Shown: positions 5,392-10,521, counted from the stretch's first letter. The stretch is 64,000 nt of DNA from Oikopleura dioica (GCA_907165135.1 OU015569.1:9734001-9798000), one strand, 5' to 3'. Notes: generated by a model not told the origin, from the sequence alone. A program made the numbers and translations.

Positions 5392-6378
5392 TTACTTTTT
5401 GGCTTTAGCAAATCGCTCAGCGACGTTGTTCCAGTTGAAGACATCGAAGATCTTCTCAACGTACTGAGCACGGAGATTTTTGTACTGGATGTAGTAGGCG
5501 TGCTCCCAAACGTCGATGCCGAGAAGAGGAATTAATCCAGTCGTAGCCTCGAGTGGGTCTTGGTTCTGGCAGGTAGCGACCTGCAATTTGGAAGCAGTCT
5601 TATTCCAGCCGAGCCATCCCCAGCCAGATCCTACAATTTATCTTTATTTCAAGAGAAATAAAAATCTTAATACCTTTGACAGCAGCTGACTTGGCGCACA
5701 TTTCTTTCTTGAAAGCTTCAAACGAACCGAAGTCAGTATTGATCTGGTCGGCGAGCTCGCCAGTTGGGAGGCCACCGCCATTAGGAGCCATGTTAGTCCA
5801 GAAGATAGTGTGGTTAATATGTCCTCCGCCATTGAAGTTGATAGCCTCAGAAACTAAATCAAACTGATATATTTAAATAAATACTCTGATCTTACGCTGG
5901 TTCATCGCGTTGACGTCCCCAGCGCGTTCAGCAGCAGCAAGCTTTTCGACAGCGGCGTTGAGGTTAGTAACGTAACCATTGTGGTGCTGAAAATTAAATT
6001 AACACGAAATCACTTCAGAATCTCAACCTTTGAGTGATGGATTCGCATGATCTCTTCGCAGATAGTTGGCTCGAGTTGACCGTATTCATAGCCAAGCTTT
6101 GGCAGCTCGTACTTTAGATCTTGGCCTGTTTCTGCCTTGATCGAGCCGAGGACCTTGGCGATCAGAGGGTTTCGGATTCCGGCTTGCGCTTTACCATCGC
6201 TGATAACGATGTTCTTGATAAAGTCGGTCTGCTCAGAGATAGCAGCGCCTTCGGAAGCAGCATTGGCCATCTTCAACAATAATAAGAAATAATTGATCTA
6301 AGTATGACATGCCTGGTTGATTTTGATGCCAGTTGCTTCGGCAAGCTTGGCTTCAAGTGCAGCTACGTAAGAATCCAT
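5392..6378 (-). CDS. SOD2: Mn/Fe superoxide dismutase (272 aa) with long acidic N-terminal extension
   Basis: [22 protein letters not shown] and DVWEHAYY motifs. Five exons; introns 6271-6312 (GC-AG), 5987-6027, 5854-5895, 5631-5673; spliced CDS 819 nt. Confidence 0.95.
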
Positions 6379-6452
6379 ACTAAAATAGATAATCTTCAAA
6401 TTCTGAAGCAGAATTACACTAATGTTTTTGAGAGAACAGAATAAATATGAAT

Positions 6453-7587
6453 TTAGGCTGATGGATCAACTACATATCGTCCCGTGATGTTGCCGGAAAG
6501 CATCGCTTTTGCGACGTCGGGAACCTCTTCCAAAGAAATGATCGGATTTCGGCCGATCAAGTCGAGAGCACTCTCTGGGCAGGCGTTGGACAATAGTTCG
6601 TATGCAGATTCTCTTTTCGAGATTGGAAGGTAAACACATTCGACACCATTTAAAGTGATTCCACGGAGAATAAAGGGTGCTTCATGGAGTCACTTACTAT
6701 CGACAAATAAAAACATGTAAATAAAAAATTGGTGACGCATTCCTACGCTCGTCGGGAGATCTAATCCTGCAGCAAGGCCACAGGCCGAAACAGTGCCATA
6801 TTTCTTCGTCATCGACAAAATATTTGCAAGAACGTTTGACCCGCAAGCATCGACGGCACCGGCGAACCTCTCCTTTGCGAGAGGACGAGGTTTGCCTTCA
6901 AAATCTGATCGTTCGAGGACACTACTCGCTCCTAACGAAGTAAGGAATTCGCTATCTCGATCAGCTTTTCCGCTTATTGCGTGGACTTCGTAGCCAAGAT
7001 TGCTAAGCAATGAAATGGAGACGGAGCCAACGCCCCCAGTAGCACCAGAGACGGCGATAGGCCCATCTGATGGTTTCACGGAATCTCGAATAGCCTCAAC
7101 GCAAAGCGCACTTGTGTACCCAGCAGTGCCTATTCTTGCAGCTGTCAAATGGCTCATTCCCTCAGGCAGCCTTTGACACCACTCTGGTCGGACTCTTGCT
7201 TCTTCCGCATAACCGCCAAAATGATCAGTGCCTATCCCAAAGCCGTTCACAAGGATTTCGTCGCCTTCTTTAAACTGTCCGGAAGTGTCTGACATAACAG
7301 TTCCTGTCAGATCAATGCCGCCAACCATTGGAAATGGGAGACCAGCATAAAGACCTTGAGCGACAAGAGCATCTTAAAAGTTCTTTATACTTTCAACGGG
7401 CTCTTCAAGTACCTTTGTAATTGACGTTTGAGTATTTCACCTTAACGTGGACACTGCAAGGCCCTTTTTCGCCTCGAACTTTAGAGACCTCTGGCAAGTC
7501 AGCTACAGTAAGGCTTTGAACAGAAGCGGGAGTCTTTTTAGCGGATGTTACCAGAGCTCGAAACGCACGAGCACTAGTTAATTTCAT
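6453..7587 (-). CDS. acuI: MDR-family quinone oxidoreductase, YhdH/AcuI (acrylyl-CoA reductase) type, 343 aa
   Basis: SNVNYKDAL, GGYAEEARV, IGTAGYTSALCV, SGATGGVGS, ACGLAAG and PTSVAPFILRGITLNG are YhdH/AcuI hallmarks. Introns 7373-7412 (GT-AG) and 6680-6742 (GA-AG). Confidence 0.88.
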
Positions 7588-8199
7588 TCTGAAAATAATA
7601 TGGATGACTGTCGAGCCAATTTAGATTTAATGAAGAATATCATATTCTGAATATGTTAATAGTTAACAACTTCAGACCACGCTTGTTAGTGATGTTTACC
7701 CGTTGTTTAGCTAGTCGTGGCTGTGTCTGCGTTGAGGTGTTGAAATTAACTTTTTTATATAAATAGATATGTCTGAGTAAATATATGATATTTTACTACT
7801 GAATAGATCTCTCATCAGCATCATCACTTGTTAATATAAATATTCATATCAGCTAAACAGGAAATTATTTGGAGCTCAGTTTAGTTTTTCGTTTATTCGA
7901 TTTGAGCGAGGTTAAATGATCCCCTTTTCTTAAAAATCACGTAGGAAAGTAGCACAGTTTGTACTAATGATTAGGAATCTATATTAATAAAATTAAGTTA
8001 AAAGTTCAAATGTCGAACTTTAAGCGATGACTATAATCGCATAGCCGCTGAAATCTAATGTAATACGGTTGTTAAACCGCAGTCAGGTCCGTCGCTTGAT
8101 ATGGCAGTGTTTTTCGAAGCGCATCATTCTCAGAAGCTAAAGCGAGAGAGAGAGAAAAATTTCAACACTTTCCCCCGCAGCACGTCTTTGGCTCCATTA

Positions 8200-10521
8200 T
8201 CATTTCAATGCTTTTTCTTCGACGAGCAGCCGCTCCATCCTAATTATACATTTAACTCTACCGTATGAAGACATAAATACTGTACCTCCGATTCTTTCTT
8301 TTTGGTATCTTTTTCATTGGACTGAATGTCCCACATCTTTCGATAATGATTATTTAATGCCAATAGCTCCGTGTGGCTACCCATCTCTGCAACTTCACCG
8401 TCTTTGAGCACAATGATTTTGTCGCTGTTAACAATTGTCGAAAGCCTGTGAGCGATGACGAGCAGGGATTTGTTCTTCGTCGCATTATCGAGGGAATCGA
8501 GGATACGCTGTTTTAAAATTAGAAAAGAAGCTTTTGATATTTACCTGTTCAGTGAGCGAGTCGAGCGAGCTTGTAGCTTCATCATAAATAACGATTTCTG
8601 GGTCCTTGAGGAAACACCGAGCAATTGCTAGACGCTGTTTCTCGCCGCCCGACAGCTTCACTCCTCGTTCACCGACGATAGTTTGGTAGCCGTTCTTCAT
8701 TTCCTCCACTGATCTGTGCAAATCTGCCACTTCAGCAGCTTCGATGATTTGATCTTCAGTAGCATTCAAGTCTCCATATCGAATGTTGTTGTAAATGGTG
8801 TCGTTGAACAAAACTAAACGAACAAAATCGTTTGTTGCTTTATGAAAATGAAACTCACCGCAATCTTGTGGGACGACTCCAATTTTTTCGCGGAAAGATT
8901 TAAGATTGAAGTTACGAATGTCCTCCCCATTTAGCTGAACAGAGCCTTCTTTTGGGTCATAAAACCTGAACAGTAGCTTCGCTAGTGTAGATTTCCCCGA
9001 CCCTGAGCCGCCCACAATAGCGACCCGTTCACCGGGGCGGATACGAAAGTCTACGCCTTTGAGGATCGAGTTTCCGTCGGCATATGCAAACTTGACATTG
9101 TTGAATCGTACTTCTAGGTCTTTATCCATAGGCGGTGTCTTTGTTCCTTCTTCTAACTCTGGTTTTTCTTCCATCAATCGCCACATCGTTTCAAAATCTG
9201 TTCGTGCTTGAATTAAGTCTCTGTAGGTGGATCCCAAGAAACTGAGCGGTCTTTGAATCTGTTGGAAATAACTGGCAATCATCACAAACTCTCCAAGAGT
9301 CAGTGTTCCTGCAGCGATAGAAGCCTAACAAAGAATTAGCTGAGTACAGTACGGAGAACGCTCAACCTGTCCAAAGTCGAGGATCCCAGAGGCCATTCCC
9401 AAGTTGAAAAGCAAGCACGAGCCCAAAATTGCTTGCTGCCCCATATTCAAAAGTGCGAGAGTTCGGTCAGTTTTAAGAGCCGCGCGTTCGAAATTAGCTA
9501 ACTTGCCATCATAGCGAGTTGCTTCATATTTTTCATTTGCAAAATATTTGACGGTTTCATAGTTGAGAAGAGAGTCCGTGGCTAAGTTACCAGCATCCAT
9601 GTCGGCTTTGTTCATGGCTATTCGGAAGGGCGTTCTATACTAGAAAAAAAAAAGAAAATTTATACAATTGATTTTGGAAAAATTAAACCTGAGTGAATTT
9701 TATGGAAAAGGCGGAATAGATTCCAGAAGAGACGAGGAGAGAGGTAGCGTAGAGAGGACCACAGAAATACCAAATAAAAGCACCAGTACACATGACTTGA
9801 AACATTGCGGGTGTAAATACAATACAGGTGGCATGGAGAACGGTGGATATTGCCCGATTCCCCCTGTCAACAGCCTTAATTAAAAATATTGAAAGCTGGA
9901 AACTTGAAAAGATAATAACCTTCAGAAGCGCACCCGTCTCCCGATTCGTATGAAACCGATGATCAAGAGAGAAGAGCTTTTCGACGAGTCCGCGGCCTAT
10001 TTTTCTAGTGGTGCTTTGCTTTACTGTTGCGAATGTGTACGATTTGTACTGGTCGATAGTGGGCTCGAGTAAGCTCACCGCTGCGTACGTAGCGAACGGA
10101 GCGGCAATAACAGCGGCATTTTCTAGCGATGGCAGAGCTCCACTCTCGATAGCTTTAACCAAAGTAAGATATTGCTACCTCAAATACTGACAAACCTGTT
10201 AAAGTATTGACTAAATCTTTCCAGAAGATGGGGATTGCCAGGCTGAGCCCCTTCGCTCCAAAAATCAAGGCTCCAGTTTTCATGACAGTGAGTTTTATTC
10301 TTAACTTTGATAAGATAATAAACAAGCCTTATTGGTTACCTCGATGATTCGGGAACCTGCGCACTTGGCCAAATAAATGGCTTTACTTTTTTCATCAGTT
10401 GACCGGTTGTGAGTTCAACTCGATCCAGGCCATCAATATTGCCAATGACTGCAGCCCCATGAGTGTGAAATCGCTTTATAGTGATAACTCGTCTCCGAGT
10501 TAGACAAGATATCGTACTCAT
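8200..10521 (-). CDS. ABCB7: Mitochondrial ABC half-transporter (ATM1/ABCB7)
   Basis: Transit-peptide-like N-terminus. [38 protein letters not shown] and IAHRLST motifs. The exact last exon is uncertain. Confidence 0.92.

What the first reader, a model, noticed from the sequence alone, without database searches (positions are those of the whole stretch)
6453..7587. Bacterial-type acrylyl-CoA reductase (AcuI/YhdH) domesticated in an animal-type genome
Seen: a full-length 343-aa MDR protein with YhdH/AcuI signature segments, two spliceosomal introns (one GA-AG) and a ttttcag acceptor 1 nt before the ATG, so it is host-integrated rather than contamination. Established: AcuI/YhdH reduces toxic acrylyl-CoA, a product of DMSP/acrylate catabolism in marine bacteria. 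Vertebrate MDRs (CRYZ, VAT1, MECR, PTGR) belong to other subfamilies. Inference: a horizontally acquired detoxification enzyme in a phytoplankton grazer exposed to dietary DMSP/acrylate. The short Arg/Ser N-terminal extension (MKLTSARAFRAL) could be a mitochondrial presequence.
Basis: partly seen in the sequence, partly recalled or inferred. Interest (0 to 1): 0.75.

Follow-up and report, generated by a model that had tools for sequence, protein, structure and literature searches.

The report
Oikopleura's bacterial-type acrylyl-CoA reductase gene
The tunicate Oikopleura dioica has a working, spliced gene for a bacterial-type enzyme that probably detoxifies acrylyl-CoA; this was published in 2012, but its closest relatives are genes in copepods and a few diatoms, not bacteria.

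Summary
On the minus strand, 7587..6453, lies a single-copy, three-exon gene of 343 codons. Intron 1 is 40 nt (GT-AG) and intron 2 is 63 nt (GA-AG). It encodes a YhdH/AcuI-family medium-chain reductase in the Oikopleura dioica genome. Natural transcripts of sister lineages are spliced at both introns, carry the 40-nt spliced leader joined one base before the ATG, and are polyadenylated. Exon-by-exon dN/dS is 0.01-0.23.

The core claim is not new. Todd et al. 2012 (PMC3338564) described this O. dioica AcuI homologue, its two introns and an inter-domain transfer.

The new point changes the story. The gene belongs to a tight eukaryote-only clade (support 100/99) with calanoid and harpacticoid copepods, other appendicularians and a few diatoms. 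The clade shares a roughly 12-residue insert, a GTDH motif and a basic, acid-free N-terminus. The best bacterial proteins are only 42-49% identical. A single old bacterial origin is therefore likely, but which eukaryote received the gene first, and how it spread, stays unresolved.

Acrylyl-CoA reduction, mitochondrial location and a dietary DMSP/acrylate role remain inferences.

The three exons were never joined. Full-length tests used the database orthologue P0121.

The parts
7588..7600 (-). Spliced-leader trans-splice acceptor: a pyrimidine run, then AG at 7590-7589, then one base (7588) before the ATG
   Evidence: Sequence read. In sister-lineage cDNA contigs L102 and L103 the 40-nt leader is joined directly to 'A ATG'. 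The same 40-mer occurs 49 times in this genome, and the two copies examined (L104, L105) are followed by gt, as in SL RNA genes. Use of this site in the window's own lineage is inferred by homology.
7413..7587 (-). Exon 1: codons 1-58 plus the first base of codon 59. It holds the basic, acid-free N-terminus and the eukaryote-clade insert
   Evidence: It aligns to P0121 residues 1-58. It gives no family hit on its own.
7373..7412 (-). Intron 1: 40 nt, GT-AG, phase 1, at NYK|D
   Evidence: The same position is used in Norwegian O. dioica (39 nt) and in a second appendicularian species (78 nt, locus L001). It is removed in transcript L101.
6743..7372 (-). Exon 2: the last two bases of codon 59, codons 60-268, and the first base of codon 269. 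It covers most of the GroES-like domain and the Rossmann domain with GATGGVG
   Evidence: Scores: TIGR02823 247.8 bits; Pfam ADH_N and ADH_zinc_N; E. coli YhdH 1e-55.
6680..6742 (-). Intron 2: 63 nt, non-canonical GA-AG, phase 1, at TSV|APF
   Evidence: Only this junction restores the invariant VAPFILRG. The same GA-AG intron (80 nt) exists in Norwegian O. dioica and is removed exactly in transcript L101. GA-AG introns are frequent in O. dioica (PMC7072748). The other appendicularian species has no intron here.
6453..6679 (-). Exon 3: the last two bases of codon 269, codons 270-343, and the TAA stop (6455-6453)
   Evidence: (TIGR02823 51.5 bits, profile positions 255-323).
6379..6452 (-). 74-nt spacer (3' UTR and poly(A) region) before the Mn-superoxide dismutase gene on the same strand. 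That gene's ATG at 6378-6376 also follows 'ttttag t'
   Evidence: In sister-lineage cDNA the poly(A) tail starts about 50 nt after the stop. The same gene order, ABC transporter, this gene, MnSOD, is found in Norwegian O. dioica.

Best explanation
This is a single-copy nuclear gene of Oikopleura dioica. It is trans-spliced, polyadenylated and under purifying selection. It encodes a YhdH/AcuI-family, zinc-independent-type medium-chain reductase.

Shown: the gene belongs to a compact eukaryote-only branch of that otherwise bacterial family. The branch is shared with other appendicularians, calanoid and harpacticoid copepods, and a few diatoms.

Inferred: this branch arose once from a bacterial gene long ago, before the appendicularian lineages sampled here diverged. 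The present patchy distribution reflects either later eukaryote-to-eukaryote spread or heavy loss.

Inferred mechanism: the enzyme uses NADPH to reduce the toxic electrophile acrylyl-CoA to propionyl-CoA, probably in mitochondria. There, propionyl-CoA carboxylase and methylmalonyl-CoA mutase pass the product on to succinyl-CoA. Acrylyl-CoA would come from dietary acrylate/DMSP after CoA activation, or from endogenous propionate/3-hydroxypropionate metabolism.
For: Gene reality:
- Exon-by-exon match to P0121.
- Single copy in the 64.3-Mb genome.
- Flanked by intron-bearing ABC-transporter and MnSOD genes, in the same order as in Norwegian O. dioica.
- Wild transcripts are spliced at both introns, carry the spliced leader and end in poly(A).
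- dN/dS is 0.014-0.23 per exon, with synonymous sites near saturation.

Family:
- TIGR02823 scores 335 bits for the full-length orthologue, against a cut-off of 297.
- Top structures are YhdH and AcuI.
- Of 92 covered columns that are at least 95% conserved in 74 bacterial proteins, 82 are identical in the window exons.

Eukaryote clade:
- Support is 100 SH-aLRT in two quick trees, 99 in a third, and 100/99 in the careful tree, with a stem of 0.79.
- Shared features are a roughly 12-residue insert, GTDH in place of GExH, a C-terminal 3-residue insert and a basic N-terminus.
- In 1.84 billion cluster representatives the clade collapses to one 50% cluster at 510 bits plus one fragment representative of it (P0055, 411 bits). 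The next best full-length, bacterial-type hit scores 377 bits.
- All eleven members examined on contigs of about 10 kb to 16 Mb lie in eukaryote-like, non-operonic context. Eight have neighbours with recognisably eukaryotic domains, and the two annotated copepod genes carry introns.

Pathway context: methylmalonyl-CoA mutase and carboxyltransferase genes are present in this genome.

Function of the family: acuI/yhdH mutants are acrylate-hypersensitive (PMC3338564).
Against: - No enzymatic or localisation data exist for any member of the eukaryote clade.
- The full-length orthologue fails NCBI's AcuI equivalog cut-off (325 against 440 bits).
- 10 of the 92 conserved positions differ, including the Glu of the GExH motif.
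- The extension over bacterial proteins is only about 8-10 residues, and the diatom members lack most of it, so import is uncertain.
- Some transcripts (L100, L101) keep a genome-colinear 5' UTR instead of the leader.
- Carriers include non-grazers (diatoms) and estuarine or freshwater taxa, so the DMSP link is not compelling.
- Most clade members are unnamed metatranscriptome contigs, so the true taxonomic spread is unknown.
Confidence: 0.7

Rival explanations
1. Direct transfer from a marine bacterium into the appendicularian lineage, as proposed by the first reader and by Todd et al. 2012. Copepods and diatoms would have obtained their copies separately or later.
For: The family is overwhelmingly bacterial: 26082 hits in the big search, and the named ones are mostly Pseudomonadota. 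When the tree is rooted on bacteria, appendicularians are the first branch of the eukaryote clade, which fits their being the first recipient. No intron position is shared between Oikopleura, Eurytemora and Tigriopus.
Against: Separate transfers from bacteria are contradicted by the 100/99-supported eukaryote clade and its shared indels. No bacterial protein exceeds 49% identity and no donor class stands out. The position of the root says nothing about which eukaryote was first.
Confidence: 0.15
2. An old gene of bilaterian animals, or of eukaryotes more widely, inherited vertically and lost in nearly all lineages except appendicularians and copepods, with a secondary transfer to diatoms.
For: The bacteria-rooted topology splits chordate (appendicularian) from arthropod (copepod) sequences. 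AU tests do not reject animals as one clade (p = 0.14) or copepods as one clade (p = 0.13). Eurytemora has about 11 introns. TTC21 | reductase | WDR19-type microsynteny is conserved across divergent copepod-like genomes, which shows long residence.
Against: Only copepods, Oikopleura and one diatom appear among the named members in two word searches and the exhaustive search. The eukaryote members are 51-69% identical to each other, which is tight for a gene older than Bilateria. No intron positions are shared. Corallochytrium, a unicellular relative of animals, has a different copy that is closer to bacteria. The scenario needs dozens of independent losses.
Confidence: 0.15
3. The protein has drifted to another substrate, for example other short enoyl-CoAs or 2-alkenals or quinones, and is not an acrylyl-CoA reductase in these eukaryotes.
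For: It scores below the AcuI equivalog cut-off. The clade has its own insert in the substrate-side GroES-like domain, and the conserved GExH motif is changed to GTDH.
Against: 82 of 92 strongly conserved bacterial positions are retained. The eukaryote members score 325-374 bits on the AcuI model, far above any other family. Diverse bacterial members of the family all confer acrylate resistance (PMC3338564, PMC4029986).
Confidence: 0.2

Closest known systems
Oikopleura dioica 'zinc-binding alcohol dehydrogenase-like protein' (AAT47884.1 / CBY19948.1, gene BACOIKO008_47), described as an AcuI homologue by Todd et al. 2012 (PMC3338564)
   Same: It is the orthologue of the window gene. It has 343 aa, the same two intron positions including the GA-AG donor, and the same neighbours (ABC transporter upstream, MnSOD downstream).
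   Different: Protein identity is about 85% and coding-DNA identity about 78%, with synonymous sites near saturation. The window therefore comes from a deeply diverged O. dioica lineage.
E. coli YhdH (PDB 1o89/1o8c) and Ruegeria pomeroyi / Rhodobacter AcuI (PDB 5gxe/5gxf): NADPH-dependent acrylyl-CoA reductases of MDR subfamily MDR012 (TIGR02823)
   Same: Same fold and domain order, the same GxxGGVG dinucleotide motif, VAPFILRG and most invariant residues. Exon 2 matches at 1e-55 and 1e-47.
   Different: Full-length identity to bacterial family members is 42-49%. The eukaryote clade has an 8-10-residue basic N-terminal extension, a roughly 12-residue insert after 'DLP', GTDH instead of GExH, and a 3-residue C-terminal insert. 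It scores below the AcuI equivalog cut-off.
Uncharacterised copepod and diatom proteins: Eurytemora carolleeae LOC111703951, Tigriopus californicus TCAL_01251, Tigriopus kingsejongensis Tk02596, Acartia and Neocalanus transcripts, Epithemia clementina ACA910_008647
   Same: They are in the same eukaryote-only clade, share all the clade-specific indels and are 51-56% identical to the Oikopleura protein.
   Different: Their gene structures differ: about 11 introns in Eurytemora, one in Tigriopus and none in the diatom-type contigs, and none at the Oikopleura positions. Their neighbours also differ, being TTC21 and WDR19-type genes in the copepod-like genomes.
Other eukaryotic YhdH-family proteins: Corallochytrium limacisporum Clim_evm72s144 and a Crypthecodinium cohnii transcript
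   Same: They are YhdH-family reductases in eukaryotes with long N-terminal extensions.
   Different: They lie outside the clade. Corallochytrium keeps GENH, and its best hits are bacteria at 52-57% identity. These look like separate acquisitions.

Membership tests
YhdH/AcuI subfamily of medium-chain reductases (TIGR02823, MDR012) | Whole-protein score above the curated TIGR02823 cut-off (297.25 bits) | tested here: met
   The full-length orthologue P0121 scores 335.1 bits. The window exons, scanned separately, score 247.8 and 51.5 bits, with no hit for exon 1. The joined window model was not scanned, by rule.
YhdH/AcuI subfamily of medium-chain reductases (TIGR02823, MDR012) | GroES-like N-domain plus a Rossmann domain with the glycine-rich dinucleotide motif, and closest structures being YhdH/AcuI rather than other MDR subfamilies | tested here: met
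   Pfam ADH_N and ADH_zinc_N hit exon 2, and GATGGVG is present. Against the PDB, YhdH reaches 1e-55 and AcuI 1e-47, while the best hit outside the YhdH/AcuI/YhfP group is 4.9e-8 or weaker.
YhdH/AcuI subfamily of medium-chain reductases (TIGR02823, MDR012) | Retention of residues that are near-invariant across bacterial members | tested here: met
   82 of 92 covered columns that are at least 95% conserved in 74 bacterial sequences are identical. The 10 differences include Glu to Thr in GExH.
AcuI equivalog (NF051456, acrylyl-CoA reductase (NADPH)) | Whole-protein score at or above 440 bits, NCBI's threshold for assigning the exact function | tested here: not met
   P0121 scores 325 bits, copepod and diatom members score 360-374 bits, and a bacterial control scores 498 bits.
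AcuI equivalog (NF051456, acrylyl-CoA reductase (NADPH)) | NADPH-dependent reduction of acrylyl-CoA to propionyl-CoA, and protection against acrylate | not testable with these tools
   This needs an enzyme assay or complementation of an E. coli yhdH mutant. Only bacterial members have been tested (PMC3338564).
Horizontally acquired gene domesticated in an animal genome | Physical integration and host-type expression signals: spliceosomal introns, host neighbours, spliced leader, poly(A) | tested here: met
Horizontally acquired gene domesticated in an animal genome | Nearest relatives are bacterial rather than eukaryotic (a direct bacterium-to-this-lineage transfer) | tested here: not met
   The nearest relatives are copepod, diatom and other appendicularian genes in a 100/99-supported clade. 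Bacteria reach at most 49% identity.
Horizontally acquired gene domesticated in an animal genome | Absence from the recipient's close relatives and from most other animals | tested here: inconclusive
   No other named animal appeared in three word searches and one exhaustive search. However, most hits are unnamed, lists are capped at 120-150, and no search by taxon was possible. Todd et al. also report Clytia ESTs, which could not be checked here.
Mitochondrial matrix protein with an N-terminal presequence | A basic, acid-free, amphipathic N-terminus upstream of the mature fold | tested here: inconclusive
   The first 28 residues hold 5 basic and no acidic residues. In nearly every clade member tabulated the counts are 4-6 basic and 0-3 acidic (one appendicularian contig, P0007, has a long acidic N-terminal extension), against a bacterial mean of 3.3 and 5.4. 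The true extension is only about 8-10 residues. No targeting predictor or localisation data were available.

The most novel reading that the evidence does not exclude
One bacterial acrylyl-CoA reductase gene was captured once by a marine eukaryote. It then moved between unrelated plankton, reaching the two dominant groups of metazoan phytoplankton grazers (copepods and appendicularians) and some of their diatom prey. It was kept as a mitochondrial defence against acrylate released from dietary DMSP. That would make it a shared, horizontally spread 'grazer detoxification' gene.
Probability: 0.25. Interest if true: 0.7.

Novelty: already known. Interest (0 to 1): 0.35.

Why it matters
Acrylate released from algal DMSP has long been discussed as a grazing deterrent, but no animal counter-measure is known at the gene level. 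That Oikopleura carries an AcuI-type gene has been in print since 2012, so the finding as submitted adds nothing.

The addition here is that copepods carry the same eukaryote-specific version. I found no paper in the searchable library that links copepods with this enzyme. Copepods and appendicularians are the two main groups of metazoan phytoplankton grazers. This turns a curiosity of one tunicate into a testable hypothesis about how these grazers tolerate DMSP-rich prey. It also gives a clean case for studying gene sharing among eukaryotic plankton.

The locus also documents a functioning GA-AG intron and a spliced-leader acceptor one base before the start codon.

Tried and rejected
1. Shared introns as evidence of common animal ancestry. 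Eurytemora's roughly 11 exon boundaries and Tigriopus's single intron do not coincide with either Oikopleura intron. Even the second appendicularian species shares only intron 1.

2. Corallochytrium as a sister group, which would have hinted at a holozoan origin. It grouped weakly with the clade in one quick tree (support 83). Its own best hits are bacteria at 52-57% identity, and it lacks GTDH, so I rejected this.

3. Resolving the direction of spread inside the clade. AU tests reject neither animal monophyly nor copepod monophyly, so the direction is unresolved.

4. An apparent ABC-transporter-to-reductase read-through transcript (L100). Its junction is not at canonical splice sites, so I treat it as a probable assembly chimera.

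5. Naming the unnamed assemblies and samples by a literature search on their accession numbers. There were no hits.

6. A literature search on 'acuI' plus 'copepod' matched only unrelated words beginning with 'acui'.

7. The careful 87-row tree did not finish in two runs. I replaced it with a careful 38-row tree.

8. No structure prediction was run. The sequence match to solved YhdH/AcuI structures made it unnecessary.

The whole-protein scan of the window's own model is therefore left out.

Full report
**What is there**

Reading the minus strand gives a three-exon gene:
- Exon 1: 7587..7413.
- Intron 1: 7412..7373, 40 nt, GT-AG.
- Exon 2: 7372..6743.
- Intron 2: 6742..6680, 63 nt, GA-AG.
- Exon 3: 6679..6453, ending in TAA.

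The coding length is 1032 nt, or 343 codons. Both introns are phase 1.

Each was translated and searched by reference. All whole-protein analyses used the database orthologue P0121.

The three exon translations align without gaps to residues 1-58, 60-268 and 270-343 of P0121. Residues 59 and 269 are the two split codons. P0121 is the 343-aa Oikopleura dioica protein CBY19948.1/AAT47884.1.

**Whose genome**

The window lies at C2:9734001-9798000 of a 64.3-Mb, 19-contig assembly, and the gene is single-copy there. An earlier agent named the genome as the Okinawan O. dioica reference (s1-367550). My data agree:
- The orthologue is 85% identical in protein.
- The neighbours are the same as in the Norwegian O. 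dioica assembly: an ABC transporter upstream and MnSOD downstream.
- The genome holds 49 exact copies of the O. dioica-type 40-nt spliced leader; the two copies examined (L104, L105) are each followed by gt.

**Is it a working host gene**

Yes.
- In Norwegian O. dioica the two introns sit at the same places, and the second has the same GA donor.
- A wild metatranscriptome contig (L101) is spliced exactly at both.
- Two further cDNA contigs from different samples (L102, L103) begin with the 40-nt leader joined directly to 'A ATG'. They end in poly(A) about 50 nt after the stop.
- The window has the equivalent AG at 7590-7589, one base before its ATG.
- GA-AG introns are known to be common in this species (PMC7072748).
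- Compared exon by exon with those transcripts, synonymous sites are near saturation (pS 0.45-0.71) while pN is 0.03-0.14. That gives dN/dS of 0.014-0.23.

Some transcripts keep a genome-colinear 5' UTR, so trans-splicing is not the only form seen.

**What family**

- Exon 2 scores 247.8 bits and exon 3 scores 51.5 bits on TIGR02823, the acrylyl-CoA reductase family YhdH.
- The full-length orthologue scores 335 bits against a cut-off of 297. It scores only 325 bits on the AcuI equivalog model, whose cut-off is 440. A bacterial control scores 498.
- The best structures are E. coli YhdH (1e-55) and R. pomeroyi AcuI (1e-47). Human CRYZ and RTN4IP1 are at 1e-6 and 1e-3.
- Of 92 covered columns that are at least 95% conserved in 74 bacterial members, 82 are identical in the window exons. 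One of the 10 changes is Glu to Thr in the GExH motif.

**It is already published**

Todd et al. 2012 (PMC3338564) state three things. O. dioica and Clytia hemisphaerica have close AcuI homologues seen in ESTs. [quoted passage not shown] This points strongly to inter-domain horizontal transfer.

**What is new: the nearest relatives are eukaryotes**

The word search with exon 2 returned about 65 proteins of roughly 345 aa that cover the query fully at 55-85% identity. These ranked ahead of bacterial proteins at 53-57% identity.

Named members:
- Eurytemora carolleeae
- Tigriopus kingsejongensis and T. californicus
- Acartia fossae
- Neocalanus flemingeri
- the diatom Epithemia clementina

Trees place all of them with Oikopleura in one clade, apart from every sampled bacterium:
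- SH-aLRT support is 100 in the first two quick trees and 99 in the third.
- Support is 100/99 in a careful tree, with a stem of 0.79 substitutions per site.

The alignment shows clade-specific characters:
- a roughly 12-residue insert after 'DLP'
- GTDH instead of GExH
- a 3-residue insert near the C-terminus
- a short basic N-terminal extension

In the exhaustive search of 1.84 billion representatives, the clade collapses into one 50%-identity cluster at 510 bits plus one fragment representative of it (P0055, 411 bits). The next full-length, bacterial-type hit scores 377 bits.

All eleven members examined on contigs of about 10 kb to 16 Mb sit in eukaryote-like, non-operonic context. Eight have neighbours with recognisably eukaryotic domains:
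- The Eurytemora gene spans 12.4 kb with about 11 introns.
- T. californicus has one intron.
- The diatom-type copies are intronless on contigs of 1-2.4 Mb.
- Three divergent copepod-like genomes share the order TTC21 | reductase | WDR19-type gene.

The best bacterial proteins are 42-49% identical over the full length. They come from mixed alpha-, beta- and gammaproteobacteria and others, so no donor group stands out.

**Age and history**

- Seven appendicularian-type lineages form a 99-100% supported subclade.
- A second species (locus L001, 66% identical) shares intron 1 but not intron 2. The gene and its first intron therefore predate that split.
- No intron position is shared between Oikopleura, Eurytemora and Tigriopus.
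- Rooted on bacteria, the clade splits into appendicularians against the rest. Diatoms fall among the podoplean-type copepod sequences.
- AU tests reject neither animal monophyly (p = 0.14) nor copepod monophyly (p = 0.13).
- Other eukaryotes have family members outside this clade: Corallochytrium and Crypthecodinium. The Corallochytrium copy is closest to bacteria, so this family has entered eukaryotes more than once.

I therefore favour one old bacterial origin for the clade. Whether it then spread between eukaryotes or was lost many times is open.

**Likely function**

By homology, the enzyme uses NADPH to reduce acrylyl-CoA to propionyl-CoA. Bacterial acuI/yhdH mutants are hypersensitive to acrylate (PMC3338564; PMC4029986).

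The first 28 residues carry 5 basic and no acidic residues. In nearly every clade member tabulated the counts are 4-6 basic and 0-3 acidic; one appendicularian contig (P0007) has a long acidic extension. Bacterial proteins average 3.3 basic and 5.4 acidic. Copepod N-termini of the form 'MRLSPRLLSSF' look like presequences.

The genome encodes methylmalonyl-CoA mutase and several carboxyltransferases that could take propionyl-CoA onward.

The mitochondrial location and the dietary DMSP/acrylate role remain inferences. The role is made more attractive by the copepod link. It is less secure because diatoms and low-salinity taxa also carry the gene.

**Verdict**

The gene is real, well supported and functional. 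The headline interpretation is already known. The origin story needs revising from 'bacterium to Oikopleura' to 'member of a eukaryote-specific clade shared with copepods and some diatoms'. I found no paper linking copepods with this enzyme in the searchable library.

Noticed in passing
window 6376-6452 (minus strand) and locus L099 4152-4236: The Mn-superoxide dismutase gene starts 74 nt after the reductase stop codon, on the same strand. Its own AG lies one base before the ATG. In sister-lineage cDNA the reductase poly(A) site lies about 50 nt after the stop. The arrangement is conserved in Norwegian O. dioica with an 82-nt spacer, and it looks like an Oikopleura operon pair.
   Followed up: partly
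window 8244-9285 (minus strand); locus L099 72-2429: The upstream neighbour is an ABC half-transporter with ABC_membrane and ABC_tran domains. The order ABC transporter, reductase, MnSOD is conserved between two deeply diverged O. dioica lineages. If the reductase and the transporter are mitochondrial, as MnSOD usually is, this would be a small cluster of mitochondrial-protein genes.
   Followed up: no
loci L007 (Tigriopus californicus), L088 (GCA_029980165.1), L089 (ENA ERZ22147071): The microsynteny TTC21/IFT139 (minus strand) | AcuI-type reductase | WDR19/IFT122-type gene is conserved across three genomes whose reductases are only about 55% identical. The reductase thus sits between two intraflagellar-transport genes. 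The organism behind GCA_029980165.1 also has a second, intron-containing paralogue (L098).
   Followed up: partly
locus L006 7711-7848 and 9341-9544 (Eurytemora): Residues 22-67 of the Eurytemora protein match two separate genomic stretches, at 87% and about 49% identity. This may be a duplicated or alternative exon in the 12.4-kb gene.
   Followed up: no
locus L100 1-103 against L099 2273-2416 and 2875 onward: One metatranscriptome contig joins the 3' end of the ABC-transporter gene to the reductase 5' UTR across 458 nt. The junction has no canonical splice dinucleotides. It is probably an assembly chimera, but a read-through transcript is not excluded.
   Followed up: partly
G000, 49 sites, for example C1:7555039-7555078 (L104): The 40-nt spliced-leader sequence occurs 49 times in this genome, often as nearby inverted pairs 450-2700 bp apart. 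The two copies examined (L104, L105) are followed by a gt donor.
   Followed up: no
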